Of a DNA stretch of 57,158 nt, positions 3,738-35,595 are shown one piece after another. The notes beneath the pieces are model-generated. The model saw nothing but the letters and a program-made list of their open reading frames with translations, searched no databases and was not told the DNA's origin. The stretch is from assembly GCA_026770705.1 (NCBI GenBank), contig JANJGN010000724.1:248001-305158 (forward strand), in the 5' to 3' direction. Numbering within the stretch: position 1 is the stretch's first letter; every line of letters starts with the position of its first letter. This DNA is from Isurus oxyrinchus. Its lineage: Eukaryota. The translations under genes and the position numbers were made by a program.

Positions 3738-4435
3738 CTGTCGGAGGGTCAGTACTGAGGGAGTGCTGCACAGTCGGAGGGTCAGTACTGAGGGAGTGCT
3801 GCATTGTCAGAGGGTTAGTACTGAGGGAGTGCTGCACTGTCAGAGGGTCAGTACTGAGGGAGTGCTGCATTGTCAGAGGGTCAGTCTTGAGGGAGTGCTG
3901 CACAGTCGAAGGGTCAGTACCGGCGGGGGGATGCACAGTCGGAGGGTCAGTGCTGAGGGAGTGCAGCCTTGTCAGAGGGTCAGTTTTGAGGGAGTGTTGC
4001 ACAGTCGGAGGGTCAGTACTGAGGGAGTGTTGCATTGTCAGAGGGTCAGTCTTGAGGGAGTGCTGCACTGTTGGAGGGTCAGTACTGAGGGTGTGCTACA
4101 CTGTCAGAGGGTCAGTACTGAGGGAGTGCTGCACAGTCGGAGGGTCAGTACTGAGAGGGTGCTGCATTGTCAGAGTCAGTACTGAGGGAGTGCTGCACAG
4201 TCGGAGGGTCAGTACTGAGGGGGTGCTGCACTGTTGAAGGCGCTGTCTTTCAGATAAGACATTAAACTGGGGCAACCAATCTGCCCTCTCAGGTGGATGT
4301 AGAGGATTCCATGGCCACAATTTAGATGAAGTGCGTCAGGAGTTGGGGGGTATGTGTGGAGGGGGTGGTGGGGGCTGGATGGGGTGGAGTTATGTCCGCT
4401 TTCCTGGGGCAAACATTTATCCCTCAACTGACATT
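3738..4435 (+). repeat. 33-bp satellite array ending in DeuSINE core
   Basis: ~15 units of CAGTACTGAGGGAGTGCTGCACTGTCGGAGGGT, then GTCTTTCAGATAAGACATTAAAC.. Confidence 0.85.
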
Positions 4436-5857: not shown

Positions 5858-6310
5858 AGAACTGAGGGAGTGCTGCACTGTCGGAGGTTCAGTACTGAGG
5901 GAGTGCTGCACTGTCGGAGGGTCTGAGCTGAGGGAGTGCTGCACTGTCGGAGGCTCTGAACTGAGGGAGTGCTGCACTGTCGGAGGGTTTGAACTGAGGG
6001 AGAGCTGCACTGTCGGAGGGTTTGAACTGAGGGAGTGCTGCACTGTCGGATGGTTTGAACTGAGAGAGTGCTGCACTGTCGGAGGTTCTGAACTGAGAGA
6101 GTGCTGCACTGTCTGAGGGTTTGAACTGAGGGAGTGCTGCACAGTCGGAGGTTCTGAACTGAGGGAGTGCTGCACTGTCGGAGGGTTTGAACTGAGGGAG
6201 TGCTGCATTGTCGGAGGGTCTGATCTGAAGGAGTGCTGCACTGTAGGAGGGTCTGAACTGAGGGAGTGCTGCGCTGTTGGAGGGTCAGTACTGAGGGAGT
6301 GCTGCGCTGT
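5858..6310 (+). repeat. 33-bp satellite array (GAACTGAG variant) at the 3' boundary of the activating Siglec gene
   Basis: ~13 tandem units. Confidence 0.9.
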
Positions 6311-7011
6311 CTAAAGAACATTGTACAAATTGCACAAAATTGCATCTGATGCCTGTGTCTCATGCTAACATGAAGTTCATGCACACAACAGGAATATTTC
6401 TCGCTGTTTCTCAGCAGCAAGACAGCTTTGGTATCACACCACCCACTGGCAAGAGTGTGCAGTTACAATGTGACATGTTTACATTGGAAATTTCTATTAT
6501 AAAGATGGACAGAGGAATTCATCTGATTGGAAAACGTGACAACATGAAGTAATGTCTTTGAGCCAAGAATTTTGCAGCAAAATAAGAATTTTAATCTTTA
6601 AATATCTACAGAACAGGCTGAGCATTTTAATCACTTGAGTTAATCAATGTAATTTTATTCATAAGCCAAATGCTTCTTACAATCTATCGCAGCATGAAAA
6701 AGGTGCAGCATTCAGAAAGCACATTCCAATCAGAGAACAGAGTTTAGCAACGTCACATTTCTGTTCATTCCTATTCGACCATGTTGGCTGCACACAGCCA
6801 GACAATGCCGTGGTTATGATGTGTCCACACAGCAGCACTGGGGAGCACCAGGTATAAGGAAAAGTTTCAGCTTGCTGAGGAGAAGAAGGAGAATCTCTCG
6901 TTCCAGGTTTCTCTCCGTACATTAAGAAGCAGGCATGCCGATGTTTCATTGCACTCTGTCTGCTGATGGGAGTCCGCTTGGAAATTGCTGTTTGTGCTGA
7001 TGGAAAGAATA

Positions 7012-7620
7012 AGCTTTTCATAAATCGAGGGATTGAGAACAAACACAGGGAGGTTATGCTGAACATTTATAAAGCTCTGGTTAGGTCACAACTAGAGTAT
7101 TGTGTCCAGTTCTGGTCTCCTCACTTTGGGAAGGAAGTGAGGGTCCTTGAGAGGGTGGGGAGGAGATTGAGCAGAATGGGTCCAGGGATGAGGGATTTTA
7201 GCTACAAGGTTGGGTTGGAGAAGCTGGGGTTGTTCTCCTTGGAGCAAAGGAGATTGAGGGGGGATCTGATCGAGGTGTACAAGATGATGATGGGTTTAGA
7301 TAAGGTAGACAAAGAGAAGCTGTTGCCATTAGCTGATGGTACAAGGACTGGGGGACACAGATTGAAGGTTTTGGGCAGAGGGGGGATGTGAGGAGGAACT
7401 TTTTTACACAGCGAGTGGTAATGAGCTGGAACTCGCTGCCTACGAGGATGGTGGAAGTGGAGACGATGAACGATATCAAACAGAAATTGGTTGGACACTT
7501 GAGGGGAAATAAACTTGCAGAGATACGGGGATAGAGAGGGGGAAATGGGACTGAGTGGATTGCTCTACACAGAGACAGCATGGACTCAATGGGCTGAACG
7601 GACTCCTACTGTGCTGGAAT
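7012..7620 (+). mobile_element. CR1 LINE 3' fragment
   Basis: Translates to YKALVRSQLEYCVQFWSPH..LGLFSLEQRRLRGDLIEVYK, the CR1 ORF2 C-terminus, plus 3' UTR. Confidence 0.9.
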
Positions 7621-7737
7621 GCCTCTCTGATACGAAGGTGATTCTAACCAGGACACTGACCAGTTTCTTTACAACTTAACCCAACATCACACGTTATTTG
7701 TCCACACTGACTGACCAGATTGTTGCTGTACAAAGCT

Positions 7738-7877
7738 TCAAACAGTCTGTCGACTTCCTTTCACTGTTTGTCTCTCCCAGACACAGACTCCAGCGATAGT
7801 GATAACCACAGCCACAAGGAATATCACAGCTCGTATTCCCAGGATCAGGATCACGTGCAGAATCTCTCCTCCACTGT
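7738..7877 (-). CDS. Terminal TM + short tail exon (D)SGGEILHVILILGIRAVIFLVAVVITIAGVCVWERQTVKGSRQTV*
   Basis: Acceptor TTCTTTCTGTGTGTTCTCTAG; phase-1 frame gives a long hydrophobic stretch with an internal Arg and a 13-aa Tyr-free tail. Confidence 0.8.
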
Positions 7878-10800
7878 CTAGAGAACACACAGAAAGAAAT
7901 CATCACTGACTCTCCGCTTTCAATCTCTCACTCTGGCTGAACAATCAAGCTTCATATCACTGCAACATTTGCTGTAATATTGACCCATCCACTGGGATTC
8001 AATGTGGAATGAATGTTTTCATTGTAAACACTCTAAGAGTGGACAATCGGAACTTTCCCCTTAGCGTGGAACATTGGTGAGAATGGATCATTGTGCTGTT
8101 GGACTCCCTGTCCAATGTTTCTCTCCATCGCTGTGTACAGGATTGTGCTGTAGAAAATTCTGGAAACGTTTAGTGCCGGGTGAAAATCCATCTCGGACGT
8201 GTGTGCGAATCAGGCAGGATCGAGATGGACTCCCCCACGGACTTACACCCCCCGCTTAATAAACAGTTCCAATCTTTACCCAGAGAGAGGGGAGAATGTG
8301 GAACTCGCTCCCACCGGGAGTGGGTGATGTGAACAGTATCGATGTACTTAAGGGGCAGGAGGGTCGGTAACCAGAGGGACACAGATTGACAAACCGGAGG
8401 GGGAGATGAAGAGAATTTGTTTTGACAGAGCGAGTTGTTGTGATCTGGAAGGTTCTGCCTGAAAGGGCGGTGGAAGCAGATTCAATAGGAACTTTCAAAA
8501 GGGAAATTGGATAAACACTAGAAGGAGGAAGATGGGGGCAAAGTGGAGTGGTGGTTAGTGGATCTGATGGGATAGCACATTGAAAGACCTGGCACAGGCT
8601 CAATGGGCTGAATGGCCTCCTCCTGTGCTGTATCATTCTCCGCTTCCATGATCTCTCCCCCAGTCAGTAACCACTCCAGATCCCTCTTGAAGGCAACAGA
8701 GAAACAGCAACCACCACACCCACTGACAGCACATTCCCAAGGATCACTACTCTCTGGGAAAAGATGAACTCCCCAACATCCAGCCTATTCCTGCTTCCCA
8801 GAGAGTGTAAACCCTTCAGGGAGGCACTGAGGAAGTTTTCAATAAAATGACATCAAATCTACCGTTTGAGAAATAATTTAATTCCGATGAACTCACAGCT
8901 TGTGTAGCAAACTGGGAAGTGGATTTGCTTGAAAAGCTGAGAGATGCAAGGGTTAAGTGCTACCTTGCCACCACTGGTGGTACAGTGTAACTACAGCGTG
9001 ACGTTTACATAGGCAATCCCTATTATAAACAAGGACATTGGACATCAGGTGAAATACGGGCACTGGAAAAGTGAGAACATGATGTAAGCTTTTCACCAAC
9101 AGGAATTCCCTTCCTAAACCTCTCCACCTCTCTCTTACTCTCAGATACTCAAACAAAATTTCACACAAAATCACATAAGGACGAGTTGGGACAGGTGACT
9201 GGTCAAAGGGTTAGGTTTCAGGAAGCTTCTTAAAGGAGGATAGAGAGTTGGAGAGACAGAGAGTATCTGTGAGTGTCTCTATGCATCTGAGTGTCTGTAA
9301 TAGACTTTGCAATTTCCATATTCTTCCATAAACATGAAAGGGAACAGAAATCTCAGAATCCAGGTCAACTCTCCAGTGCAGCACTGAGGGAGGTCAGGTA
9401 ACCCACTGGGGAGTATTGTGCTAGTGTGTTTGTTGGTGTCTTTGTGTGTGCTCATATACAAGGGATTGTGTATCTGCAGGTGTCTATTTAGGTCTGTATA
9501 TTTGTGTGTGTTTGTGTCATGTTTCAATCTGAGACAGATGATGAAATCTGTGTGCACTCACATTCCACAGTGATGGTTATGAATCCCTCCACTGCTCCAT
9601 GTTCATTCTCTGCCAAACACTGATAGTCTCCAGTGTCCCTGGATTTAACGTGAGGAATCACCAACCACAGCTCATTGTTGGAACTTGTTCTGTTCATTGT
9701 GATATTCAGATATCAGGGCAGGACTCAACAAGACAGATCGCATGTTTACCAACAGAGAGTGAACAACAATTTATATTTAAAGGGAAGAGAGTGCTGATTG
9801 ATTGGCAAGTGGTCTCGGAGGTGTTGCCATGGAAAATAATGTGTGTGAGATTTAAAGTTTAAACAGCTTGTCTCTTCATTCAGCAACAATCAAATAAAGA
9901 TCAATTAACTTCTATGGACTGTGAAGCACTTTGAGAGGCATGAGAATGTGGACACTGAGAACGGGCTGCACTGTCAGAGGGTCAGCGCTGAGGGAGTGCT
10001 GATGTAGAAGGATTTCTCAACTTACCTTGTACAGTTAGTACGAGAGTCCGCTCCAATGAAACAGATGGATATCTCACTCGGCAGCTGAGAGTGTGTCCAT
10101 GGTGTTTGAGTGATGGGATCAGGGTCAGAACAGAAGTATAGGTCAGAGTGACACCATGCTGAGTTACAGTGTTTGAGACTGATCCACGTACGTCAGTGGG
10201 AGTGTCCCAGGTTAAGACAGGTGCTGCTGTTCCATTGCACGTTGTGTTGAAGGTGCAGATTACATCCACACGCTTTCCTGCAATAATTTCAGCAGGGAAT
10301 ATCGTGGGTTTATCTGTGAAATCTAACAGACAGAGAATGGATCCTTTTAGAGAAATATAACGTGAAGCATCAGTTCAAATAGAAATGACAGTCCCACAAG
10401 AAAAAGCACTTTTACAAGGATGATATCAGAACTGAGAGATTACAATGATCAGGAGAGAATTTCCTGCTTTGACACTTTGGTGTTTCTGTCTCTCAGTTTA
10501 ACACACGTTCACTCCGAGACACTTGAACTGATAATAGTGGGTGAGGGTGGAGGAGCAGACCAGAGTTTGGAGTGCACTACCCCATCATTCACTCAGTGAT
10601 CTGGGCCATTTAGTACTTTGCAATTTGTGGGAGCTAGCTGTGCGCAAATTGGCTGCTGTGTTTCTCACATTACAACAGTAACTACAATTCAGGAATCAGC
10701 TCATTGGCTGTGAAGTGACTTGGTACATATTGAGGTGGTGAAAGGCTCCATAGAAATGTGAATCTTTCTTTTGTCGATATGTCAGACTTCGAGACAGGAT

Positions 10801-13800
10801 TAGAGAGATCGATGGGAGTGGATAACTTGATAACATTGATGGACACAGTCAATACATTTATCATTGATATTAAAGTGAGTATTAGAGGTTGCTTTAGGAC
10901 TGAACTGGAAGCTATCACCATGTTATTGAGAATCAGACAGTGTGTTATAATAAGCTGTGTTTTGTGTTAATATGTAAACGTCACAGTTTGTGTTATTTCC
11001 CATTGAGTGTTGGATGTGAACTGTTGAGTAATTATAACACAGCACTTACCAGAAACGTGAAGCCGGGTTACAGGGTAATAGTTATGGCTCGGACCATTGT
11101 CAAATTCTATTCTGAAAAAATAAGGTCCCGCATCTTCTCATCTGATGTTGTCTATGATCAAGGAACAGTCGCCATCTTTCAGGTCTCCAGACAGCCGGGT
11201 CCGATGGCAGAACCGTGGTAACTCGTGACTGTGATCCTTGGAGTGAAAGTCAATGGGAGCCCAGGGAATCTGTTTCTCATTATTAAACCAGACTCCACCT
11301 CGCGGTTGGTTTTCCAGACACGATGGATAACTGAAATGACATGGAATCTGTACACACGAACCTTCCTGTGCTGTCACCTCTCGTGGAGTGTCACCTTTCC
11401 ACTCTTGTGACAGTCCAACTGGGGAGAGAAATATCAATATTTAACTCTGGATGGTTTGTGGATCCACTGAACCCGATATTTACAGATGAGGCTGAATTGG
11501 GGGGATGGTCAATACTGAGGAGAATGGCAACAAATTATTTTGGCAGGAAGAATAGAAAAACAGGATATTATTTAAATGGAGACAGGCTGCAGAATGCAGT
11601 ACAGAGGGATCTGGGTGTCCTTGTACATGAATCACAGAAAGTCAGCATTCAGGAACACCACAGAATGAGGAAGGCAAGTGGATTGTTGGCCTTTATTGCA
11701 AATGGATGGAGTATAAAAGGAGGGAAGTCTTGCAACAGCTGCACAGGGCGTTAGTGAGATTGTAACAGGATCATTGTGTACAGGCAGTTCAGAGAAACTT
11801 CACTGGGCTGATTCCTGGGATTAAAGGGTTTGTCCTGTGAGGAAATGTTGAGCAGGTTGGGCCTGTATCCATTGGAGTTTAGAAGAATGAGGGGTGACCT
11901 TATTGAAACATATCCGATTCCGAGGGGGCTTGACAGGGTGGATGCTGGGAGGATGTTTCCCCCTCGTGGGGGAATCTAGAACCAGGGAGCACAGTTTCGG
12001 AATGAGTGCTCTCCCATTTAAGACTGAGATGAGGAGGAATTTCCTCTCTCAGAGGGATGCTAGCCTGTGGAATTCTCTTCCCCAGAGAGCAGTGGAGGCT
12101 GGGCCATTGAATGGACTCAAGGCTGAGTGAGGCAGGTTTTTGATCGACAAAGGAGTCAAGGGTTTGGGGGACAGGCAGGAAAATGGAGTTAAGGCCACAA
12201 CCAGATCAGTGAGAGCAGGCTCGAGGGGCCGAATGGCCTGCTCCTGTCCCTATTTCTTATGTTCCTACATTCTTACCTTCTTAAAATATTAAAGCAGTAG
12301 AATAAACATGCAAGTGAATGACCCGCTCGACCCACCTTCCATCTGGGGGTCCCATGGGGAGGACCCTTCCTGAGCCAGATCCACCAGCCAACATGGTCTG
12401 GATCCGAGAACAGGAGACACGGGGGGGAGTGACTAACAGGCTCCTTGTGACAGGCCCCGTCTGTCCAATGGCTGGCTTTCAGCTGCCAAGGCCAGAGTGG
12501 TCCTTGCTAAAACCAGCTCAGGACAGGTCAGGACCCCTGTGCAGACCCCCTCCAGCGCTGCAGCCTCTGTACAAACCCCTTATGCGCTTGTGGAGAGACA
12601 CAAACAAGGCTGTACATTACCGAGGAGAATCCCCTCTACGGACTAAGGGGCTGACTCATCACCTTAAACTCAGCAAATGAGGAGGCTCTCGCTCGGTATC
12701 GGGGCTTGGCATTCGCTCAATAAAAATAATCAAATTACATTTTGGTCAGAAATCTAAGGAGGTTGTACATTCCCTCAAAAATAAGACTCGATCTGGGGTC
12801 GAGGGTCAAAGGGCAACAACTTATATTTACACAACAACTTTAACATGACAAATCACCCCAAGGTGCTACACAGGAGCGTCATAAAACAAAGTATGTCACC
12901 CAGACACATGTGGAGATATTAGCGACAGCTGACCAGAAGAGGTCGGTGTTATGGAGAAACTTCAAAGAGGGATGAAATGGATAGGGAGAGAGAGAGAGAG
13001 ATAGAAATAGAGAGAGAGAGAGTGAGAGAGAGGGATGGAGAGGGGTTGAGGGAGGGTATTACAGAGCTCGGGCCCCAGGCAGCTGAAGGCACGGCCGCCG
13101 ATATTGCAGTGATGGGATCAGGGGATGGTCAAGAGGCTGGAATTGGATGAGCACAGAGACCTCAGAGGGTTGGAGGGGCTGGAGGAGGTTACAGAGAGAA
13201 GGAAGGTTGTAGTGACTGGGGCAGGTTACAGAGGTAGGGAAAGTTGTCGGGACTGGAGCAGGCTACAGAGATACGGAAGCTTTTAGGGGCAGGAGGAAGT
13301 TACAGAAATAGGGAGGGTTGTAGTGGCTGGAGGAGGTTGCAGAGATTGGTAGGTTTGTTGGGCAGGATGAATTTACAGATATAGGGAAGCGGTAGAGGCT
13401 TGAAGAGGTTACAGAGAATGGGATGGTTGTAGGTACTGGAGGAGGACGAGGAGATTACAGGGATAGAGAGGAAACAAAGATGTAAATTTGGACATTGAGA
13501 CTTTGCTTGACCAGGAGCCAGTCTCGGTCATCGAGCAAAGCGGGTGATAAGGGAATGGGACTTGGTGTGAGTAAGGACGTGGTCAGCAGTTTTGGATGGC
13601 CTCAAGTTTATGGAGTGTAGACCGTGTGTTGGAACAGTCGAGACTGGAGGTAATGAAGGCGTGGATGAGGGTTTCAGCAGCAGATGAGCTGAGACAGGGT
13701 GAAGTCTTGCGATGTTACGGAGGTGGAAATAGACGGTATTAGTGAGGGCACAGATATGAGGCCGGAAGCTCATCTCAGGATCAAATGGGACAACAAAGCT

Positions 13801-16800
13801 GTGAACAGATTGGCTTCAATCTCAGAGAGCTGCCAGGGAGAGGAATGGAGTTGGTAGCGAGGGAACAGAGTTTGGAGCGGGGAATGAAGGCAATGGCTTC
13901 AGTCTTTCCAATATTTAATTGGAGGGAATTTCTGCCCATCCAGTACTGGATGTCGGATAAGCAGCCTGATAATTTAGCAGCAGTGGAGGAGTCGAGAGAG
14001 GTGGTGGTGAGGTAGAGCTGGGCATCCTCAGTGGACAGGTGAAAACTAACACTGTTCAGATGATGCTGCAAAGCCATTGCAAGTGATTCTCTGGCTACGA
14101 TGAGATGGATAAGAATGGAGCCAGGGGAGAGCAGTCCCACCCAGCTGGACGACAGTGGAGAGGTGTTTGAGGAGGATGGTGTGGTCGAGCGTGTCAAAGG
14201 CTGCAGACAGATCGAGAAGGACGAGGAGGGAAAGTTGACCTTTGTCACAGTCACACAGGATGCCATTTGTGACCTTGATAAGAGCTGTTTCAGCACAGTG
14301 GCTGGGGTGGGAACCTGATTGGAGGGATTCAAACATGGAGTTCCGGGAAAGATGGGAACGGATTCGGGAGATGGAAACACGTTCAAGGACTTTGGAGGTG
14401 AAAGAGAGGCTGGAGATGGGACGGGGGTTTACACGGACAGTGTGAAGGGTGGAAGGTGTAGTGGGGAGGAGACACGTCACTCAGGGGGGAGGTGTCATCA
14501 CCCCTCAGCTCGGTTTACCTTACAGCTATGATGTGGATTCAATCACACACAATAAGCTCATGGATCTGGGAGCAGAAATAGACAAATCATTAAAAATAGT
14601 GACGCTGGTTAACACGGCCAAAAAACAAGCAAATCAAACACTATTATTTCCCATTGAGTGTTGGATGTGAATTGTTGAGTAATTATAACACAGCACTTAC
14701 CAGAAACGTGAAGCTGGGTTACAGGGTAATAGTTATAGCTCGGACCATTGTCAAAATCTATTCTGAAAATATAAGTTCCTGCATCTTCCCGTCTGATGTT
14801 GCTTATAATCAGGGAACAGTCGCCATCTTTCAGGTCTCCAGACAGCCGGGTCCGATGGTCGAACCGTGGTAACTCGCGACTGTGATCCTTGGAGTGAAAG
14901 GCTATAGACCATTTAAACCATTTGTTCTGTCTGTCCCTCCTCATATACCAGATTCCGACATGTGTTTTCTTTACCAAATGTGATGGGTAACTGTGATGAC
15001 ATGGAATCTGTACACACGAACCTTCCTGCGCTGTCATCTCTCGTGGAGTGTCACCTTTCCACTCTTGTGACAGTACAACTGGGGAGAGAAATATCAATAT
15101 TTAACTCTGGATGGTTTGTAGATCCACTAGACTCGATATCCACCCCCTCCATCACTGTGGCACAGTGGCTGCAGTGTGGACCATCTGCAGGACACACAAG
15201 GAAGTCCACAAGGTATCACAATGGATGGAAGAGAATCCTGGACACAGGAGTGGACAAGTTCATTCTACATTGGCTCATGGTCCTCAGGACCCTGTTTGTG
15301 CACAAGCCTTGCTATCCAACAGAACTGAAGTTGGGGAAAATCCATTTAGAATTCCACTGTCCTGGGAATTGTCCTAACTTGCTGAGTTTGTTTTAAATCT
15401 AACATCTATTTTTGGTCTGTTGCCTTAAAAGGAGTGTAACTGGGAGTCAGGTTAATTAGGAATTTTAGGAGTTATTATAGCTGTCATTGTAGTCTTATGT
15501 ATGTGCTTGAAATCTTTTATTTTGATGACAAATATTTTAATTTATTTTTTTAAATCTCTAAAGGTCTTGGTGTAATTATTGCTTCTGAATTCAGTGCACA
15601 CATCTCATAATAAATACAAATTGCAAATTCATTATGATCGTGTGACCACCTTTCTCTCATGGACTTGGTCTGCCTGGCACACATCACCTGCCAAGTGATA
15701 ACACTGTTGTAATATGCCTTTCAGGGACAGCAGCATGACATCACTCGAGGGGAAGTGTGTCATGTGATTTTTCAGAACTGGGCTTGGCTTAAGGAAGTTC
15801 TCTGTGTATTTGTGTGTGTTAGGCATAACGTATATCTGTAAGTTGAAGTTTAGTTTGTATTTCTGTATTTGGGTGTTTTGAAAAGGGGGAACTTGAGTTT
15901 TGGTTTCACTTTGGAAGAAGCCGCCTGTCTAATGAGTTTTTATGACTCTTGAAGGGAAGTCAAAACAAACACAAGGTAGAAGAAACTGTGCTGTTGCCTA
16001 GTAACAGTGGTCCAGACGGAAAGACCCACAGAGACCGAGAAAAACAGAAAAATACTTTCAGTTCTGTTGAAAGGAGTTGCCAGGAGAAGCAGCAAAGGAG
16101 CGGGACAGATAGTCAGTCCCAAAGTAAAGATGAAGCCAAAACCATCGAGTGGAACAGGAGAAAGGGCCCAAGAAGACGTTCTTATCAAATCTGGAAAAAG
16201 CCCTGTTAAGTGAAGTTAAGAGTGAGGAACAGAAGAAGGCTCGAAACATAAAGGGAGAAAGCAGCAGGACACAGACCTAAAGCAAAATAGGCTTGTGAGA
16301 AGCCAGAAGATCCTTGGAGACACCACAGGTTGGTGACTCATTACTACGGCCATGTGAAGCCATGGTGTTCCATTGACACGGCTGAGCATTGGAGAGACAG
16401 GGCGTGGAAGGAAGGCTGAATGCACGTGGCGATCCAGGGGACAGGAACATGGGAAGGAGAGTTTGAAATAGTGAAAGTGGACCCTTGTGGAAGGTGTCTG
16501 AGTGAAAGTGTCATGTTGGAGAAGATTCCAAAGCGAGTTCTTGGAGAGTGGAGATTGGAAACTCTCATATGGATATCTCAGTTCAGTGAGACTGGTTGGC
16601 TCACAGTGTAACAAGCGTCTGGGGTCTGATGAGGAGGGAGACATAGCATTTGTTCCAAGTGGGTTCTGTCAGTTTCTTTCAGAATGTGGTGTCCCTGACC
16701 CCAGGTCGTCTATTGGTTTACATCGACTGTGCACTTAGTGTGAACATGAGAGTATAAGATAGCTATTGTAACTTGTGTTCTACTTATGAATCTGCAAAGG

Positions 16801-19800
16801 TATAGGTCTGGGTGAAGGAGTAATGTAATATAGTTTGTCTTTCCTAGTTTAATAAATGTTTTATTCTTTAGTTAGAAGTTCATCAGATGACTCCTGTGAC
16901 TCTGTTCAGTAGCCGCACTCCACATTCAAAAATAAAAAATAAAAGTTAGGACCTATCAAGCTGAGTTCCACCCTGGTATCTGACTTGCCCAGTAGTAACA
17001 TCAGCTGGGATGATAACACCATCCAGTCCAAGTTTCTCTTTGGCCTGTGAGCAGAACACAGCTCACACAGTTTGGCTGCAGGTGTCTCCCAGCTTTCTAT
17101 CCTTGTTCTCATCTCCCTATTCTAAATAACTGAACCCACAATGAATTTACCCAATTCCGTATCAGTGGCTGGTGCCTTTATATCATTATAAAAACACAAC
17201 ATGGTGATCAGCGGTGGCCAAACATTCTGGCAGCAAGATTCAGTACAGGTATGACGTGGTGAACAGCCTTAGATCGAGCTACATGACATGAGACGACCCT
17301 CGACGCTTTGGTCAGACCACAACAGAGACACAGCATCAGAGAGGGTTGAAATCGCAGTGTACTGACTGCTCAGGAAACCTTTGAAGACACAGTGACGGGA
17401 AAGAGCTCAAGTAAAGAGCTGGGGAGCAGACGGATCCCTCGTGGTGAGATTACAGCACACGGCCTGTAGGTCAGTGAGTGGGACAGTGTGTATCGCCAGG
17501 ACCAGCAGCGGGTTAGCTCAGTCAGGGAAGGCGAGTGACCAGGGTGTTGTCTGGATCGATAGTGAGCGAGGGAGAGTCAAACACACAAAAACCATTATAA
17601 AAATCAGCCCAGAGAAGTTAGTGATTATAACGGGCGGCTTCGAGACTGTTGAACAGCAAATTGAATAAAAAACAAAGACTCCATTACTCCGTGGTGTGTT
17701 CCTGCCACAACCCGTCTTCGTGGGCGGAGCTTCGGAAAAGCACACAAAAGGGGCTAAAGCGACACTCATCCCAGGTCCTGTAGGAGAAGGAAGGTCAAAG
17801 GAATATTGTCAGAATGTCCACGAAATTCCCCAGTTTGAACCGGGATGTAGCTGACCGACTATCTGAATTCAGAATGTTTAAAAAGCGTACAGAACTCTGG
17901 TTTCCTGATTCAGGTGTGACTGAACCAGACGAACAAGCCATAAAAATTCACCTCGCGATTGGGAATGAAGGTCTACCCAGGCTGAACACATCAGGATTAA
18001 CAGCAGAAGAGCGAAAGGATCCCCAATAGATATGGACGACATTGGAAGACAGGTTCAGAATCACGTTAAACTCCACATTCATCAGCTAGAGTTTATGTCA
18101 TTTCATCAGCCTACACAATCCATAGACCACTTCATCAGCCGATGTAGAGAAAAGGGTACGCACTGTGATTTCAAACACAGAGTCTGCAGACACAGTTGTT
18201 GAGTTGGTGATCGCATCCACTCCCATGGAAGCCTTCCAGAAAGATCTGCTAGATAAGACCAAAACCTATAGCATTGAAGAGCTACTCAAGGATGGACATA
18301 AATACGAAGTGATCATCGCAGGTCAACGAAGCTTACAGGTCCTCAGTACAACATCAATTGTTGACACACTCACTAGAACATCCAAACCTAGTGAGACGTG
18401 TGGAAGGTGTGGCCTTCTGCAGGCACCAAGGAAATGCCCAGCTTTCCACCAATCCTGCAAGGCTTGTGGCAGAAAGGGCCATTGACAGCGGCAGGGCACT
18501 AGAGCAAAGGCTGATGCAGCTACAAAGAGCCATGCGCTGATCCAAACAGACCCTACACAACGGGGAACCTTCAATCAATAAGAATGACCATCCGCTATCC
18601 CATCAGGAACATATACATGTGGTGACTGACAAACCAGGAAATGGCGATGATGTACACGGTGAGACGAGGAGCGGTGATCGATATTCCACCTCTCACACAT
18701 ATCCTGACGTGGCTTGCCAATAAATTGTGGATTGTTGTCCTTAATGATCTCTCTGGGCACATCAAATAAACTGAAAATGTCCCATAGTGGTGGGATTTTC
18801 TGGCCCCACCCACTGCCAGGATTGTCCGGTCCGGCCGAAAGCCAATGGATTTATATTTGTCCCAATCTCCCAAGGCAGGTCCCACCATGACCGGGCCGGA
18901 AAACCCCGGCCTAGAGTTTGTGCAACATTTGTGCTCAATGTTTTGTGCAATTGTTGAACAATTTCACACCTTTTACACCATCAATCTCACGGAGAACAGA
19001 TGCTGTCACATCACCCGCACTATTGGCCAAGATTCCAATTATCTGCCCTGAGAAAGTTGCTACCTCTCCTTTATTGGCCAAGATTGACACAAGGGCAAGT
19101 GCCAACATTCCCCTCCCCCAGACCACCCCAGTAAATTTTCAAAGACATGTATCCAAGGACATGGAAGTCCATGGGGAAACCTACTGCTGTGTACAACAAT
19201 TCACCAACTCCATGTGCGGAATACATAGTCCTGGGGTGCAAGTACAATCAATCCTCCTGGGTGTCACAGATGTTCTACATCGTGGAGACTAAAGGCTGAA
19301 CAATTGCAAGTCTACCGGCATGCGGTGACCTCACACTAGTGACAATCCACGGAATCTGTCAGAACTGACATGGGTCAACCTCAGAAACTACCCCATCAAC
19401 TCAGTTCATGGACATAACATTGAAATATGCAGAAAGTTTCAACAGTATTTGCAGTTTCAAGGGAGCTGCAACATTACACCTGCAGGAGAATGCAAGTCTG
19501 TCAATTGATCCAGTACATTTAGCACAACAGAAATGCCAGCAGCTACAAGAGGGGACAGTGAAAAAATCTACAGGAACTGTGGAAATATCATTGAAAGGGT
19601 GGCCTGATTCAACTTGACGTCATCGGGATAAGCGAGGCATCTCCCAGGGAGTCATTTTTAATGGCAGGCATCGCATCATACCAGAACCTTTGTGATGATA
19701 TATTCTTCAACAACTTCATCCTTCACACATGGGCACAGATCAGACAAGGAGACTCACAAGAGATACAGTCCCTGGCCGGGTATAAACAATGACCTTGAAG

Positions 19801-22129
19801 TCGTTGTAGGGAAGTTCGAGGCTTGTCAAGAGGATGAGCCAAGTCAAGACAAAGAACCACTGATTCCACAGGAAATTCCTGCCCATTCTTAGTCCAAAAT
19901 CACATCTGAATCCTTTCATGTCCATGTCACTGACTTCATCATCATCGTCGACAGCTTTACCAGATACCCCGTTATTCAAAAATAGCACAACACACCGAGC
20001 ACAACTGCTGCTTACACTCTAAGCACTATTTTCAGTTTATTTGGTGAGCCTAGGGACATGATTACAGATAATCTGGAATATCAATCACACTACTTCTTCT
20101 CCTCATTACCCCAGATCTAACAGCCTAGCTGAATGAATGATTCACACAGTGAAATCCCTAATTCTCAAATGTAGACAGGCCAAGCAAGATCCACACATTG
20201 CAATGTTACATCTGAGATCGACACCTACAACTGCAACTTTGTTAAATTCATTCATGGGATGTGGGAGTCACTGGTCAGGCCAGGATTTATTACCCATCCC
20301 TAATGTAAGAGTTAACCACATTGACGTGGAATCTGGAGTCACATGTCGGCCAGACAATTTTGTTCCCTTAAGGGCACTGGTGAACAAGGTGGGATTTCCA
20401 ACAATGGTTTTGTGGTCATCACTAGACTTTGAATTTCATCTTTTTATTAAATTCAAATTCCATCATCTATTATGACAGGATTTGAACCCATATGCTCAGG
20501 ACATTACCCTGGGTCTCTGAATTACTCGTCCAGCAACAATACCACTACACCATCACCTCACCTTATTCCATCACTGACAGAGAGCATGTTTGGTGGGCCA
20601 GTAGTGACCAATTTCGCTATTCTTACCCATTCTACTCTCTCAGAAACCAGAGCGCAACTTTTAAAACTACAAGAGAAGATAAGGAATGTTCATGATAAAA
20701 ATGGAGGTGCAGAGTTGCCAAGTTTACAGTTGGGACAAGTTCACATCCAGGATCCCACAGAAGGTTCATGACCACCAGCCGAGGTGACAAGGATTTGTGC
20801 AGAACCAAGGGCCTATGGAGTCAAACACACAAGGGCACAGCGGTGAGGCGGAACCGAGGATAAATCAGATCCATTCCCGCTCCTATTCCATCGAGGAGAA
20901 GATCCCACATGAAATCAGGATCAGCATCCAAGGGTAACAATCCCACAGATCACTGTGAGCAGTTAAAGACACCTCCGGACAAGGTAACCAGCACAAGATC
21001 TGGGTGTACCAGAAGGTCAAATCCACACTTTAGAGACTCAAATATTCAACAGTTCCGTACACTTATGTAATTGTCAATAAATATGAACATGATATGAGAA
21101 ACCGCTTGCTCCCTATCCTTCTCAAAGATCCATTCCTGCAGCAGGAGCCTGAAGAGTTATTGAAAAGGGACTTAATTTATCGAATTGTAGAATGATCCGG
21201 AACAGAAGGAAGCCATTTGGCCCATCGAACCTGTGCTGGGCCTTTGAAAGATCTGTCCAATTATTCCCACTCTCACCTCTGCTCTCTCCCCCACAGCCCT
21301 GCAAAATGTCCCCTTCAAGTATTTATCCAGTTCCCCTTCTGAAAGTTCCTGTTGAATCTGCTTCCACCGCCCTTTCAGGCAGTGAGTCAATGGTCTCTCT
21401 CTGAGCTGCAAAGTGATAAGTTTCAATGAAATATAAACTCTGCAGCAGATCAGAAACAATCATGATAACTCAGAATATTTGACAGTTTTACATACAGACA
21501 GCTTTGCCTCCCTTCTCTCTATCAGTTATCTTGCTATCTTATCGAATTTTCTAGCATGGTGAGAAGGGACAGGAAGTGTGACGCTGAACTGCCTGTCTAA
21601 TCTAAGAGCTTCTGTGTTGTCTTCATGGGGAATTCTGATGAAAATCAGCAAGAGAGAAAAATTTTAGGGCATTGATATCGGAGTGCTTGCGTCAGGATAG
21701 ACTTCATCCCCCAGTTTTTATCCCTGCTTCTCTATTCAGCCGATCGCTCCCCTGTCACTCGCTGACCTACACTGACTCCCAGTCCAGCAATGACTCAATT
21801 TTCAAAATCTCTTCATTGATTCCTTATCCCTCCATCCTCCCTCTCTACTCCCTATCACTGTCACCTCCTCCAGCCCTGAAACCCTTTGAGGTCTCTGCTG
21901 TCCTCCAATTCTGCTGTCAGACAGGGAGTCAGTGTATATCAGTGAGCACAGGGGTGATGGGTGAATGGGACTTGGTGTGAGTTTGTACACTGGCTCACTG
22001 CTGAATCGGTTCCCTATCAGAGCTCAATAAGAATGATCTTTTACAAAGACTATTAGCCATAAGTCTGTCCAAGCTGACGATGATATTACCTTGGAGAAGT
22101 GACAGGAGGAAGTAAGATTTCCCGATCAT
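7738..22129 (-). CDS. Spliced gene: activating-type two-Ig-domain Siglec (CD33/MAG-related), exons 22129-22090, 15078-14701, 10322-10026, 7877-7738; 284 aa
   Basis: All junctions GT-AG and phase 1; lengths 40+378+297+140=855 nt give an open frame to TGA; requires skipping the pseudo-V at 11050-11418. Confidence 0.8.
10026..10322 (-). CDS. Siglec domain-2 C2-set Ig exon (FTDKPTIFPAEIIAGKRVDVICTFNTTCNGTAAPVLTW..SVLTLIPSLKHHGHTLSCRV..)
   Basis: 297 nt, phase 1-1, AG/GTAAG; B-strand Cys, extra inter-domain Cys, Trp and HGxxLxC motif typical of Siglec domain 2. Confidence 0.92.
11050..11418 (-). pseudogene. Duplicate Siglec V-set exon with premature TGA
   Basis: Intact splice sites, 369 nt; in-frame TGA at 11140-11138 (NIR*EDAGPYFFR). 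Confidence 0.88.
11476..12275 (+). mobile_element. CR1 LINE 3' fragment
   Basis: QRDLGVLVHES, RRNFLSQR..SLWNSLPQRAVEA and CR1 3' tail. Confidence 0.85.
12815..14460 (-). mobile_element. L2-type LINE fragment (degenerate RT and 3' region with 37-mer array)
   Basis: RPISSLSFTSKVLER, ETALIKVTN, LLVLLDLSAAFDTLDH, LQLNIGKTE, FHLRNIARL. Confidence 0.85.
14701..15078 (-). CDS. Intact Siglec V-set (sialic-acid-binding) exon
   Basis: 378 nt, phase 1-1; TAQEGSCVQIPC (two Cys), GDLKDGDCSL (E-strand Cys), EDAGTYIFR with the essential F-strand Arg, as in CD33 DNGSYFFR. Confidence 0.93.
15295..15703 (+). mobile_element. LTR fragment (same family as 29904-30948 and 54349-55300)
   Basis: Shared GAATTCAGTGCACACATCTCATAATAAATACAAATTGCAAA..CTGGCACACATCA..ATAACA end. 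Confidence 0.6.
15708..17018 (+). mobile_element. Probable solo LTR
   Basis: TGTAAT..ATAACA termini, AATAAA near 3' end, no coding signal. Confidence 0.45.
17814..20870 (+). mobile_element. Degenerate, internally deleted Gypsy/Ty3 LTR retrotransposon
   Basis: gag with zinc knuckles (CGRCG..CPAFHQSCKACGRKGH), protease-like KIDTRASAN, integrase WPGINNDLE..VDSFTRYP..SPHYPRSNSLAE..LRSTP; many stops; RT not seen. Confidence 0.85.
22090..22129 (-). CDS. Siglec leader exon MIGKSYFLLSLLQ
   Basis: ATG, hydrophobic core, CAAG|GTAATA phase-1 donor; completes the signal peptide with V-exon start VVLSQEW; conserved in two other copies. Confidence 0.85.
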
Positions 22130-28205: not shown

Positions 28206-28324
28206 ATTGTCTAAAAGCAGTTCTGATCTCTGGAGAGCTGTCGGACAAGAGGTGAGGTCTCATTAACTCCTTTCTCTTTCACAGCTTGAGAGTGAGAAGC
28301 TGATGAAATATCTGGGAATGGACA

Positions 28325-28356
28325 ATGATCTTACTTCCTCCTGTCAGTTCTCCAAG
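28325..28356 (+). pseudogene. Disabled leader exon, paralog 2
   Basis: 8-nt deletion relative to the other leaders and donor GT changed to CT. Confidence 0.8.
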
Positions 28357-28589
28357 CTAATATCATCGTCAGCTCGGACAGATTTATGGTTAATAGTCTT
28401 TGTAAAAGATCATTCTTATTGAGCTGTGATTGGGAACCGATTCAGCAGTGAGCCAGTGTACAAACTCACACCAAGTCCCATTCACCCATCACCCCTGTGA
28501 TCACTGATATTCACTGACTCCCTGTCTGACAGCAACAGAAAATTAAAATCCAGGTCATCCTGTAGAAATCCCTCCAAAATTTTGCAACT

Positions 28590-29452: not shown

Positions 29453-29818
29453 TTGGACTGTCACAAGAGTGGAAAGGTGACACTCCATGAGAGGTGACAG
29501 CGCAGGAATATTCGTGTGTACAGATTCCATGTCATTACAGTTATCCATCGTGTCTGGAAAACCAACCACAAATTGGAATCTGGTTTAATGACAAAGTCCT
29601 GATAAGATTCTTTATAGCCTTTCACTCCAAGGATCACAGTCACGAGTTACCACTGTTCCGGCATCGGACCCGGCTGTCTGGAGACCTGAAAGATGGTGAC
29701 TGTTCACTGATTATAAACAACATCAGATGGGAAGATGCAGGACCTTATTTTTTCAGAATAAAATTTGACAATGGTCCAAGCCATAACTATTACCCTGTAA
29801 CCCAGCTTCAAGTTTCTG
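29453..29818 (+). pseudogene. Siglec V-set exon with premature TGA
   Basis: 366 nt, intact AG/GT; CGA>TGA at 29488-29490; retains EDAGPYFFR. Confidence 0.9.
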
Positions 29819-31191: not shown

Positions 31192-31488
31192 ATTTCACAG
31201 ATAAACCCACGATATTCCCTGCTGAAATTATTGCAGGAAAGCGTGTGGATGTAAGCTGCACCTTCAACACAACGTGCAATGGAACAGCAGCACCTGTCTT
31301 AACCTGGGACACTCCCACTGACGTCCCTGGATCAGTCTCAAACACTGTAACTCAGCATGGTGTCACTCTGACCTATACTTCTGTTCTGACCCTGATCCCA
31401 TCACTCAAACACCACGGACACACTCTCAGCTGCAGAGTGAGATATCCATCTGTTTCATCGGAGCAGACCTTCATACTAACTGTGCAAG
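31192..31488 (+). CDS. Siglec domain-2 C2-set exon (open, but upstream leader and V are disabled)
   Basis: 297 nt, phase 1-1, close paralog of 10026-10322. Confidence 0.8.
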
Positions 31489-31699: not shown

Positions 31700-32200
31700 G
31701 TACTCACCCCCTGACAGTGCAGCACTCCCTCAGTACTGACCCTCTGACAGTGCAGCACTCACTCAATACTGAACCTCTGACAGTACAACACTCCCTCAGT
31801 ACTGACCCTCCGACAGTGCAGCGCACTTTCAGTACTGAACCTCCAACAGTACAACACTCCCTCAGTACTGACCCTCCGACAGTGCGGCACTCCCTGAGGA
31901 CTGTCCCACCGACAGTGCAGCACTCCATCAGTACTGACCCTCCAACAGCGCAACAATTCCTCAGTACTGTCCCTCTGACAGTGCAACACTCCCTCAAAAC
32001 TGTCTCTCCGACAGATTAGCACTCCCTCGATACTGTCCCTCTGACAGTGCAGCACTCCCTCAGTACTGTCCCTCTGACAGTGTAGCACTCCCTCAGTACT
32101 GACCCTCCGACAGTGCTGCACTCCCTCAGTACTGTTCCTCTGACAGTGTAGCACTCCCTCAGTACTGACCCACTGACAGTGCAGCACTCCCTCAGTACTG
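31700..32200 (-). repeat. 33-bp satellite array
   Basis: ~15 units, C-rich on + strand. Confidence 0.9.
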
Positions 32201-32439
32201 ACACTGGGGAATTTCAGTCTACTCTGTGGGGCAGGCATCTGCTGAATGGGGTCTTGAACCCCACAAAATTCTAAAACATACTGACTCCCTGAGTTCGGGT
32301 GTGAAACCCACTGACCCACAGGAGAAACTCCTGGTCAATGACTGTGCACCTGTGAGCAGAAATATCAACACAGGGTCAGGACACAAAGGATTAACAGTTC
32401 ACCAACATCTCAAAACATGAGCTGCTCTGTCACTTTGAA

Positions 32440-32582
32440 CCAACTTCCTCATTTTGTCTCAAAGTGACACATCCACCCTTTCTCATTAAACACACAGAGG
32501 GAGCAGCACAGGAAGAGGTCATTCAGCCCAAGCAGAGCGTGTGGGCAGTTCCTCCCCAGGCGAGCAGTCGGACAGGTCCTGG
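32440..32582 (+). promoter_or_regulatory. Promoter/non-coding exon 1, paralog 3
   Basis: ACTTCCTCATTTT site and donor GTAAGT at 32583. Confidence 0.5.
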
Positions 32583-33035
32583 GTAAGTAACGGAACGATT
32601 GGAATTCACTTCCACCACCAACACCGTCCTTTGTTGATGTTGTGACTTTATGAAGACAGATTCCAATGATTGATGCCTTTGAAAGATTTCCACTGATTAT
32701 TGAGATCTGGGTGTGAGACTCAAGTCTGTTGTACAGAACATCTTTCTAGCTCAAGGGATGAGGGAACTGTAGATACTTTGGGGTGTCCTGATGTGGTGAA
32801 AAGTGCTATAGAAATGCAAGTCCTTTGTTGTTTTTCATTCTTAAAGCCTTGTAACTCTCTGCAGAACACCTATCATCCCACAGGGATGATTATTCTGTGA
32901 ATTATTCTGTGAAGACATTGTCTAAAAGCAGTTCTGATCTCTCGAGAGCTGTTGGACAAGAGGTGAGGTCTCATTAACTCCTTTCCCTTTCAGAGTTTCA
33001 GAGTGAGAAGCTGATGAAATATCTGGGAGTGGATA

Positions 33036-33075
33036 ATGATTGGAAAATCTTACTTCCTCCTGTCACTTCTCCAAG
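33036..33075 (+). CDS. Intact leader exon MIGKSYFLLSLLQ, paralog 3
   Basis: ATG..CAAG|GTAATA, phase 1. Confidence 0.75.
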
Positions 33076-33936
33076 GTAATATCATCGTCAGCTCGGACAG
33101 ATTTATGGTTAATAGCCTTTGTAAAAGATCATTCTTATTGAGCTGTTATTGGGAACCGATTCAGCAGTGAGCCAGTGTACAAGCTCACACCAAGTCCCAT
33201 TCACCCATCACCCCTAAACTATCTGTCTCCTGGTCCTACAACATCTCAAACTTAAAAGTCACATCTCTTTGTTCAAATGCATCCATTGCCTCACACTGCC
33301 TCCTTATCTCTGTAAGCTCCTGCAACTCTCCCAACCAAAGTCCCAGATCTCTGTGTTACTCCAATTCCGGCCTCTTGACCATCCCCCGATTCCCATCACT
33401 CCAATACTGGCGGCCGGGCCTTCAGCTGCCTGGGGCCTGAGCTCTGGAATTCACTCCCTAAACCTCGGGGATGGGGGAGCTCAGAGGGTTTCATTTTACT
33501 GAGAATCACCACGACCACATCACAGCTGCAGTCAGAATAGACAGAGAGTCCAGCCCTCGCACTTCCTGCACAGTTTCACCATAGCAACCACAATAAGGAA
33601 GTAAAATAACTGAAAGTTAAACCGAAGACAAACCAGTCGGTGTAGAGAGATGAGATATTTACACAGTTTCCCTGTGTATCTTGTAGACACTGTGTTGGGT
33701 GGAAGACTGGCTTCACTAAACAGGGTCCTGAGGACCATGAGCCAATGTAGAATGAACTTGTCCACTCCTGTGACCAGGATTCTCTTCCATCCATTGTGAA
33801 ACCTTGGGGAGATCCTTGTGTGTCCTGTAGATGGTCCACACTGCAGCCACTGTGCCCCAGTGATGGAGGGGGTGGATATCGAGTCTATTGGATCTACAAA
33901 CCATCCAGAGTTAAATATTGATATTTCTCTCCCTAG

Positions 33937-33947
33937 TTGGAATGTCA
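33937..33947 (+). pseudogene. 11-nt stub of a deleted V exon
   Basis: V-exon acceptor context and TTGGAATGTCA retained; sequence then jumps to the homolog of ~9390 (post-C2 intron). Confidence 0.75.
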
Positions 33948-35455: not shown

Positions 35456-35595
35456 ACAGTGGAGGAGAGATTCTGCACGTGATCCTGATCCTGGGAATAC
35501 GAGCTGTGATATTCCTTGTGGCTGTGGTTATCACTATCGCTGGAGTCTGTGTCTGGGAGAGACAAACAGTGAAAGGAAGTCGACAGACTGTTTGA
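35456..35595 (+). CDS. Second copy of the Arg-containing TM/short-tail terminal exon
   Basis: Appears nucleotide-identical to the reverse complement of 7738-7877; Arg codon at 35500-35502. Confidence 0.72.

What the first reader, a model, noticed from the sequence alone, without database searches (positions are those of the whole stretch)
7738..22129. Apparently intact activating-type Siglec (V-C2-TM with Arg, no tail tyrosine) in a probable shark
Seen: four phase-compatible exons give 284 aa with Siglec Cys pattern, essential Arg, TM ILHVILILGIRAVIFLVAVVITIAGVCVW and a 13-aa tail. Known: a basic TM residue with a short tail marks receptors that pair with DAP12/FcR-gamma (Siglec-14, -15, -16). 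Together with ITIM/ITSM tails in the same cluster, this implies a paired activating/inhibitory Siglec system in an early-branching jawed vertebrate. The ORF track translates this TM exon in the wrong frame.
Basis: partly seen in the sequence, partly recalled or inferred. Interest (0 to 1): 0.8.

Follow-up and report, generated by a model that had tools for sequence, protein, structure and literature searches.

The report
Shark activating-type Siglec with broken V
This is a shark sialic-acid-receptor (Siglec) gene of the "activating" kind, with a charged membrane anchor and no signalling tail; such genes are already auto-annotated in other sharks, and this copy has a stop codon in one of its two binding-domain exons, so it is probably not intact.

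Summary
The four exons exist as described on the minus strand: leader 22129-22090, V 15078-14701, C2 10322-10026, and TM plus stop 7877-7738. All are phase 1 with GT-AG introns and together give 284 codons. The V exon is Siglec-like: its best solved relatives are all Siglecs, and the ligand-binding Arg and the Cys pattern are present. The membrane exon has an embedded Arg and a 12-residue tail without Tyr.

One spliced contig from a public run that looks like RNA of the same species joins 10026 to 7877 exactly.

The gene is not a four-exon gene, though. The "pseudo-V" (11418-11050) has the same splice sites as the intact V and is in frame. It is 94% identical to the second V domain of white-shark RefSeq models of 404-406 aa (leader-V1-V2-C2-TM), and the window is collinear with those models. 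It carries one TGA. The normal transcript should therefore stop in V2, and the 284-aa protein needs V2 to be skipped.

The V-C2-TM(Arg) design is already annotated in white shark and two catsharks, with the TM core ILGIRAVIF unchanged. Adaptor pairing is untested. The inhibitory neighbour is also broken at its 5' end.

Verdict: a new member of a known kind, of moderate interest.

The parts
22090..22129 (-). Leader exon (ATG at 22129, MIGKSYFLLSLLQ, phase-1 GT donor)
   Evidence: The same leader occurs in white shark, whale shark and catshark models. In one search a loose end at 11420 in run X1 is the reverse complement of this exon, showing the leader spliced to a V2-type exon.
14701..15078 (-). 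V1 exon: intact Siglec-type V-set with the binding Arg (YIFRI), three Cys and a 4-residue insertion in the C-C' region
   Evidence: It is 84% identical to V1 of the white-shark model P0017.
11050..11418 (-).
   Evidence: It is 93-94% identical to V2 of P0017, P0023 and P0019.
10026..10322 (-). C2-set exon (Siglec domain 2, three Cys)
   Evidence: Joint 10322/11050 is seen in runs X1 and X7, and joint 10026/7877 in X1.
9563..9714 (-). 3' half of a second C2/I-set exon (C2b remnant). It has a strong GTGAGT donor and no usable in-frame acceptor.
   Evidence: I-set 1.7e-06. The intact copy is at 41599-41877 on the plus strand. X2 record 20 joins 9563 to 7877.
7738..7877 (-). Terminal exon: stalk SGGE, a 29-residue TM with Arg at position 11, a 12-residue tail, and TGA at 7740-7738
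   Evidence: The core ILGIRAVIF is unchanged in the 16 shark models I read that carry this exon. Contigs run on past the stop to about 7410-7467.
6654..6659 (-). First AATAAA after the stop, a candidate poly(A) signal about 1.1 kb downstream
   Evidence: Position only; not shown to be used.
14049..14480 (-). Reverse-transcriptase fragment (LINE-like) in the V1-V2 intron
   Evidence: RVT_1, 1.6e-09.
35456..35595 (+). Second copy of the TM(Arg) exon, inside an inverted duplication (33951-37455 matches 9392-5861)
   Evidence: It is 100% identical over about 295 nt, within a repeat that is 92% identical overall.
33036..33075 (+). Intact second copy of the leader. The V-to-C2b stretch is deleted after it (junction 33947/33951), leaving a 'headless' leader plus TM copy.

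Best explanation
The stretch is one member of a shark multigene family of CD33-related-like Siglec receptors with an activating-type membrane anchor.

Its real layout has five coding exons: leader, V1 (15078-14701), V2 (11418-11050), C2, and a terminal exon that holds the membrane span and the stop. All introns are phase 1.

Shown here: V1 is a Siglec V-set with the ligand-binding Arg. The membrane span carries an Arg buried among hydrophobic residues. The tail has 12 residues and no Tyr. The C2-to-TM splice is used in the family. White-shark and catshark models share the design.

Also shown: V2 has a single in-frame TGA but perfect splice sites. A normally spliced transcript (407 codons without the TGA) would therefore end in V2 and give no membrane protein. 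The copy is most likely a recently disabled gene or a null allele.

Inferred, not shown: in intact family members the V domain binds sialylated glycans through the Arg. The TM Arg pairs with the TM Asp of an ITAM adaptor of the DAP12 / FcR-gamma / CD3-zeta family, giving Syk-type activating signals that oppose the ITIM/ITSM siblings.
For: - Exons, phases and ORF.
- Siglec identity of V1: the 17 best solved sequences are all Siglecs (E from 1.3e-13 to 4.5e-08) with the Arg aligned. Pfam gives V-set and Ig_CD22. Cys21, Cys26, Cys87 and Arg105 are invariant in 12 elasmobranch sequences.
- V2: same acceptor and donor as V1, 369 nt, one TGA.
- Collinearity with white-shark P0017 (XP_041037143.1, 404 aa): V1 84%, V2 94%, C2 93%, TM 96%. 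P0023 (406 aa) and P0019 (422 aa) have the same layout.
- TM exon: conserved, with Arg and an early stop, in P0008, P0013, P0014 and P0020-P0024 (white shark), P0005, P0006 and P0027 (S. canicula) and P0015 (S. torazame).
- Spliced contigs: joint 7877/10026 with GT..AG ends in X1; joint 10322/11050 in X1 and X7; leader joined to a V2-type exon in X1.
- General rule linking a basic TM residue and a short tail to ITAM adaptors: PMC6288428 and PMC3031540.
Against: - Locus-specific transcripts were not resolved. The joint 7877/10026 rests on one contig with only 28 letters on its shorter side. The TM exon is identical in the plus-strand copy and near-identical in paralogs.
- All contigs over V2 carry letters that differ from the window at 11209 and 11334, so they come from other V exons. 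Neither inclusion nor skipping of V2 at this locus was seen.
- The TGA could be an allele or an assembly error; no run of the source individual was available.
- RefSeq models are predictions.
- Adaptor pairing is by analogy only. A 2014 survey placed the origin of the FcR gamma chain at bony fish (PMC4016189).
Confidence: 0.6

Rival explanations
1. V2 is a dead exon that the spliceosome ignores. The main product is the 284-aa leader-V1-C2-TM(Arg) receptor, an intact activating-type Siglec.
For: The four exons are phase-compatible and open. The C2-to-TM joint exists in RNA-like contigs. No contig with V2's own letters was seen. Single-V models of 280-281 aa exist in white shark (P0020, P0021, P0024).
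Against: V2 has the same acceptor and donor as V1. All two-V white-shark models include V2. The single-V models use a V2-type domain, never a V1-type one. No run holds more than 0.24 of the words of the V1 stretch, and 14% of its 31-mers are shared with other V copies in this window alone.
Confidence: 0.2
2. The TGA in V2 is an allele of the sequenced individual or an assembly error. The species has an intact two-V activating-type receptor of 407 aa at this locus.
For: There is only one defect in 369 nt, and V2 is 94% identical to functional-looking white-shark V2 domains. The neighbouring paralogous exons have CGG or TGG at this codon.
Against: The window reads TGA plainly. V2 also has other private changes, for example a Cys in PRFCHRT where relatives have H or R. 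The surrounding cluster is full of decayed copies.
Confidence: 0.12
3. The whole locus is untranscribed debris, a mosaic of duplicated Siglec fragments. The spliced contigs all come from paralogs elsewhere in the genome.
For: There is an inverted duplication with deletions, a half C2b exon, LINE and retroelement insertions, and a 7-kb first intron against an estimated 0.6 kb or so in the other copy. V1-specific words were not found in any run.
Against: X1 record 3 matches 7869-8176 with 0 differences in 308 letters, whereas the two copies differ at about 6 positions across roughly this stretch. Something from this very copy is therefore in that run. It could be pre-mRNA or contaminating DNA. 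The leader, V1, C2 and TM exons are all open with intact splice sites.
Confidence: 0.08

Closest known systems
White-shark RefSeq models XP_041037143.1 (P0017, 404 aa, 'Siglec-13 isoform X1') and XP_041037141.1 (P0023, 406 aa, 'Siglec-12 isoform X1')
   Same: Same exon order: leader, V1, V2, C2, TM(Arg) with a short tail. Same leader peptide. Identity to P0017 is V1 84%, V2 94%, C2 93% and TM exon 96%.
   Different: Those models are open throughout, whereas the window has TGA in V2. They are automatic predictions with no published study that I could find.
Single-V shark models: white shark P0020, P0021, P0024 and P0008; S. canicula XP_038669862.1, XP_038669859.1 and XP_038668956.1; S. torazame XP_072325011.1
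   Same: The TM core ILGIRAVIF is identical.
   Different: Their V is of the V2 type.
Human Siglec-14 and Siglec-16 (activating partners of Siglec-5 and Siglec-11)
   Same: A Siglec ectodomain on a TM with a basic residue and a short tail. An ITIM-bearing sibling with a similar ectodomain lies nearby. Pairing with DAP12 through the TM charge is described in PMC6288428.
   Different: No orthology is shown. The shark pair here is only 89% (V) and 96% (C2) identical in DNA, against near-identity in Siglec-5/14 (the human figure is from my own knowledge). Adaptor use is untested.
Siglec-15
   Same: V plus C2 ectodomain, a basic TM residue, DAP12 coupling, and conservation across vertebrates (the last point is from my own knowledge).
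   Different: It is a weak sequence match (E=7e-04, against 1e-13 for Siglec-5), so this gene is not a Siglec-15 ortholog.
Human Siglec-12
   Same: Two tandem V-set domains, which is the reason NCBI named the white-shark two-V models 'Siglec-12'.
   Different: Siglec-12 has ITIM-type signalling (my own knowledge). The shark genes end in a charged TM with a short tail.
Skate MDIR family
   Same: A multigene family of activating and inhibitory IgSF receptors in a cartilaginous fish (PMC3031540). Paired receptor families in this lineage are therefore not new.
   Different: MDIR V domains are CD300/TREM/pIgR-like, not Siglec-like.

Membership tests
Siglec (I-type lectin) | N-terminal V-set domain that resembles solved Siglec V domains more than other IgSF domains | tested here: met
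   the 17 best PDB sequences are all Siglecs (Siglec-5 1.3e-13, sialoadhesin 3e-12, MAG 1e-11, Siglec-8, CD33, Siglec-7, Siglec-10). The next best is JAML at 4.7e-07. V-set 1.4e-14 and Ig_CD22 1.8e-10, both above cut-off.
Siglec (I-type lectin) | Conserved Arg on strand F that binds the sialic-acid carboxylate | tested here: met
   YIFRI aligns with YFFRVE of Siglec-5 and YNFRFE of sialoadhesin. Arg105 is invariant in 12 elasmobranch sequences. The V2 exon keeps it too (YFFRIE).
Siglec (I-type lectin) | Cys pattern: B-E intrasheet pair plus an extra V Cys matched by an extra Cys in domain 2, with no canonical F-strand Cys | tested here: met
   Cys21, Cys26 and Cys87 are invariant. The F-strand position holds Phe. 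C2 has C-x5-C aligned to MAG. This is the sequence pattern only; the bonds themselves were not tested.
Siglec (I-type lectin) | Binds sialylated glycans | not testable with these tools
   Needs a glycan array or cell binding, with an Arg mutant as control.
Activating-type (adaptor-coupled) immunoreceptor, as Siglec-14/-15/-16 | Basic residue inside the membrane span | tested here: met
   Arg is at position 11 of a 29-residue hydrophobic span (mean hydropathy of 19-residue windows up to 2.95). It is conserved in every shark model I read that carries this exon.
Activating-type (adaptor-coupled) immunoreceptor, as Siglec-14/-15/-16 | Short cytoplasmic tail without ITIM, ITSM or other Tyr motif, with the stop in the TM exon | tested here: met
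   The tail is 12 residues with no Tyr, and TGA is at 7740-7738. No tail-like exon lies on the minus strand below 7738 in the window. Contigs run through the stop into the 3' UTR.
Activating-type (adaptor-coupled) immunoreceptor, as Siglec-14/-15/-16 | Physical association with DAP12, FcR-gamma or another ITAM adaptor | not testable with these tools
   No adaptor gene lies in the window, and no tool could search shark genomes for one. PMC4016189 (2014) dated the FcR gamma chain to bony fish.
Activating-type (adaptor-coupled) immunoreceptor, as Siglec-14/-15/-16 | Open reading frame intact under ordinary splicing (functional gene) | tested here: not met
   V2 (11418-11050) has consensus splice sites and an in-frame TGA. 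The two-V models of white shark include this exon.
Paired receptor system (Siglec-5/14 type) | Nearby inhibitory sibling with a closely similar ectodomain and ITIM/ITSM tail | tested here: inconclusive
   The plus strand has V, C2, C2b, an uncharged-type TM, and tails with LFYANI and TEYxQI. V is 89% and C2 96% identical in DNA. However, its leader has an 8-bp deletion and its donor is GT>CT, and its V has a TGA.
Orthology to a mammalian activating Siglec (14, 15 or 16) | Specific sequence affinity or a tree placing it with one of them | tested here: inconclusive
   Only E-values against solved structures were available: roughly equidistant from CD33-related Siglecs, sialoadhesin and MAG, and far from Siglec-15 and CD22. 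No tree was built, because no mammalian full-length set was available from the tools.
Two-V Siglec layout (as white-shark 'Siglec-12/13' models) | Two tandem V-set exons of the same phase before C2, collinear with the models | tested here: met
   V1 is 378 nt and V2 369 nt, both phase 1-1. tblastn order is V1, V2, C2, TM.

The most novel reading that the evidence does not exclude
Sharks keep an old, conserved 'activating arm' of CD33-related-like Siglecs. One dedicated terminal exon, with a charged TM (core ILGIRAVIF), has been held almost unchanged between lamniform and carcharhiniform sharks. It is combined with one or two V exons that differ mainly in a mosaic C-C' patch. If so, paired activating and inhibitory Siglec signalling through an ITAM adaptor predates the split of cartilaginous and bony vertebrates, or arose independently in sharks. 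Tandem V1 and V2 exons might also serve as alternative binding heads on one signalling stalk.
Probability: 0.3. Interest if true: 0.65.

Novelty: new member of a known kind. Interest (0 to 1): 0.4.

Why it matters
Reviews treat activating Siglecs (14, 15, 16) and paired Siglecs mainly as a mammalian theme. Here a Siglec-type ectodomain sits on a charged-TM, tail-less anchor, and the same design is conserved in white shark and catshark models. That makes it testable whether paired sialic-acid sensing is ancestral to jawed vertebrates, and which ITAM adaptor sharks use. I found no paper in the held library that describes shark Siglecs beyond a passing mention. The family is visible only in automatic RefSeq annotation. 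This particular locus is a poor representative because its second V exon is disabled and its neighbours are decayed. The value therefore lies in the family, not in this copy.

Tried and rejected
- Downstream ITIM exons. I scanned both strands for ITIM/ITSM-like motifs to see whether the stop in the TM exon is bypassed. Nothing tail-like lies on the minus strand below 7738.
- A special selective signature on the TM exon. The two copies are 100% identical there, but so are neighbouring non-coding windows. This looks like a recent duplication or conversion, not selection.
- dN/dS between V and C2 copies gave 0.4-1.25 on few sites, which is uninformative. The C-C' patch has high dS as well as high dN, so it is mosaic rather than simply selected.
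- Public runs. The V1 stretch is held at 0.24 of its words at most, which paralog-shared words can explain. The single read-laying run could not include V1 together with the TM exon because of the 6,000-letter limit. The V1/C2 and V1/V2 joints were therefore not examined.
- Papers on shark DAP12 or FcR-gamma: three searches gave nothing useful.
The large representative search and structure prediction were not used, because the word search and family scans had settled the family.
Full report
**Observation.** On the minus strand I found the four exons exactly as described.
- The leader is 22129-22090 (40 nt, MIGKSYFLLSLLQ, donor GT).
- The V exon is 15078-14701 (378 nt).
- The C2 exon is 10322-10026 (297 nt).
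- The last exon is 7877-7738 (140 nt including TGA).

All acceptors are AG behind pyrimidine tracts, all donors are GTAAG-like, and all introns are phase 1. The total of 855 nt gives 284 codons plus a stop. After the 29-residue span the tail has 12 residues, not 13, and no Tyr.

- The V exon's best solved relatives are all Siglecs: Siglec-5 at 1.3e-13, then sialoadhesin, MAG, Siglec-8, CD33, Siglec-7 and Siglec-10. Non-Siglec IgSF proteins start at 4.7e-07. Siglec-15 (7e-04) and CD22 (1.7e-03) are far.
- The Arg of YIFRI aligns with the Arg of YFFRVE in Siglec-5 and of YNFRFE in sialoadhesin.
- Pfam gives V-set (1.4e-14) and Ig_CD22 (1.8e-10) for V, and C2-set_2 (1.7e-09) for C2.
- C2 aligns to domain 2 of MAG and CD33, including the C-x5-C.
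- In an alignment with 11 elasmobranch proteins, Cys21, Cys26, Cys87 and Arg105 are invariant.
- The last exon encodes a strongly hydrophobic span with Arg at position 11 of 29.

**The surroundings change the gene model.**
- Aligned with the good V, it has the same acceptor (TCTCTCCCCAG) and the same donor (G|GTAAGTGC). It is 369 nt, so it is in frame, and it has one TGA at 11140-11138.
- Between C2 and the TM exon lies the 3' half of another Ig exon (9714-9563) with a GTGAGT donor. Its intact counterpart is at 41599-41877 on the plus strand.
- A self-comparison shows a diverged inverted duplication: 5861-9392 matches 37455-33951 at 92%, rising to 97-100% in the middle. It carries a second, identical TM(Arg) exon at 35456-35595.
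- An intact second leader lies at 33036-33075. Behind it everything from V to C2b is deleted (junction 33947/33951), leaving a headless leader-plus-TM copy.
- The other plus-strand unit is the inhibitory-type gene. It has V at 29453-29818, C2 at 31192-31488, C2b, an uncharged-type TM, and four tail cassettes with LFYANI and TEYxQI. Its leader has lost 8 bp and its donor is GT>CT. Its V has a TGA.

**Relatives elsewhere.** The word search with the V exon found only short white-shark and whale-shark models. I then searched with one of those hits as the query, searched again with the TM region of white-shark P0008, and looked up the clusters. Together these showed that RefSeq already holds many shark models ending in this exon.
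- White shark, single-V: P0008, P0020, P0021 and P0024 (270-281 aa, V-C2-TM; all but the 5'-truncated P0008 start with this leader).
- White shark, two-V: P0017 (XP_041037143.1, 404 aa), P0023 (XP_041037141.1, 406 aa) and P0019 (422 aa), laid out as leader-V1-V2-C2-TM.
- Scyliorhinus canicula: XP_038669862.1, XP_038669859.1 and XP_038668956.1.
- S. torazame: XP_072325011.1.

In all of them the core ILGIRAVIF is unchanged and the protein stops 6-13 residues after the span.

The window is collinear with P0017. V1 is 84% identical, the 'pseudo-V' is 94% identical to its V2, C2 is 93% and the TM exon 96%. The single-V models use a V2-type domain, and none of the models I read joins a V1-type domain to C2. 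The natural layout here is therefore leader-V1-V2-C2-TM. That is 1224 nt, or 407 codons plus the stop, interrupted by the TGA in V2.

**RNA evidence.** No public run holds more than 0.24 of the sampled words of the V1 stretch. Fourteen percent of its 31-mers are shared with the other V copies of this window alone. V1-specific sequence is therefore not seen in any run.

I laid contigs of four runs on 6900-11600.
- X1 gave a contig with 0 differences over 7869-8176, so this species, and this copy, is in that run.
- X1 has a joint 7877/10026 whose skipped part ends in CT..AC on the plus strand, which is GT..AG on the gene strand. This is the predicted C2-to-TM splice. It rests on one contig with 28 letters on the shorter side.
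- X1 and X7 show joint 10322/11050, a V-exon end joined to C2.
- X1 has loose ends at 11420 that are the reverse complement of the leader exon, so the leader is spliced to a V2-type exon.
- X2 has a 674-nt contig that joins 9563 (the half-C2b donor) to 7877 and runs 270 nt past the stop.

The family is therefore expressed and spliced as predicted. But all contigs over V2 differ from the window at 11209 and 11334, so they come from other V exons. Whether this locus includes or skips V2 was not resolved. Contigs cannot show absence.

**Mechanism.**
- Shown: a Siglec V-set with the binding Arg, a charged membrane span, a short tail, conservation of that exon across two shark orders, and ITIM/ITSM siblings.
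- Inferred from the established rule for stimulatory IgSF receptors (PMC6288428; PMC3031540): the TM Arg pairs with the TM Asp of an ITAM adaptor, so ligand binding activates rather than inhibits.

The adaptor could not be examined. A 2014 survey dated the FcR gamma chain to bony fish (PMC4016189), and my searches found nothing on shark DAP12.

**Comparison and novelty.** The gene works like Siglec-14 or Siglec-16 in design but is not shown to be their ortholog. It is not close to Siglec-15. Its two-V layout recalls Siglec-12 only in domain count. Activating and inhibitory IgSF multigene families are already known in cartilaginous fish (skate MDIRs; PMC3031540). In the held library shark Siglecs are mentioned only in passing (PMC8455134). 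I file it as a new member of a known kind. The family deserves a proper description, but this copy is most likely a recently disabled gene or a null allele.

**Limits.**
- No tree with mammalian Siglecs was built.
- No structure was predicted.
- Earlier notes of this scan on the tail cassettes, the V patch and the satellite-bracketed module gave context, and I checked each only in part.

Noticed in passing
window 28280-28390 (+) and 29453-29818 (+): The 5' end of the inhibitory-type gene on the plus strand is dead. Its leader copy has an 8-bp deletion just after the ATG, and its donor is changed from GT to CT. Its V exon has a TGA at 29488-29490 (TP*EVT).
   Followed up: partly
window 32303-37455 (+): This block is a deletion derivative of the minus-strand gene. 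An intact leader (33036-33075) and the stretch just upstream of V (33693-33947) are fused at 33947/33951 to the region upstream of the TM(Arg) exon (35456-35595). The result is a headless leader-plus-TM copy sitting between C2 and C2b of the plus-strand gene, flanked by 33-bp satellite.
   Followed up: partly
window 14890-15000 (-), codons 27-63 of the V exons: The C-C' patch differs strongly between V1, V2 and the plus-strand V in silent as well as replacement sites (dS 0.73 against 0.07 in the rest of the exon). This points to a mosaic or converted origin rather than simple positive selection. V1-type domains carry a 4-residue insertion (WYMRR...) that is also present in white-shark V1 domains.
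   Followed up: partly
window 9563-9816 (-): A contig of run X2 covers 9816-9563 without a break and then splices from the half-C2b donor to the TM exon. A transcript that retains the C2-C2b intron would read GKLRNPSTSALPQR and then stop after C2, giving a possible soluble V-C2 form.
   Followed up: no
window 9965-10001: A short element just after the C2 donor has very high contig depth in all four runs, with 'goes back 33' joints and many loose ends. It is a common dispersed or hairpin repeat.
   Followed up: no
window 42425-42520 (+): The membrane exon of the inhibitory-type gene reads TVGLFTAGIMLSVLLAEIFIFICVRK, so it has a Glu inside the span. The S. torazame counterpart (P0012) has no such charge.
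   Followed up: no
window 15079-22089 (-), first intron: The first intron is 7 kb here against my estimate of roughly 0.6 kb in the plus-strand copy. It is filled with retroelement-like ORFs on the plus strand, including a CCHC-knuckle-like stretch at 18165-18485 that has no Pfam hit. A LINE reverse-transcriptase fragment lies in the V1-V2 intron (14049-14480).
   Followed up: partly
window 3738-4240, 5858-6311, 31700-32200, 37005-38890: Blocks of a 33-bp satellite, which translates as repeats of PLTVQHSLSTD, bracket the duplicated segments and may have mediated the rearrangements.
   Followed up: no
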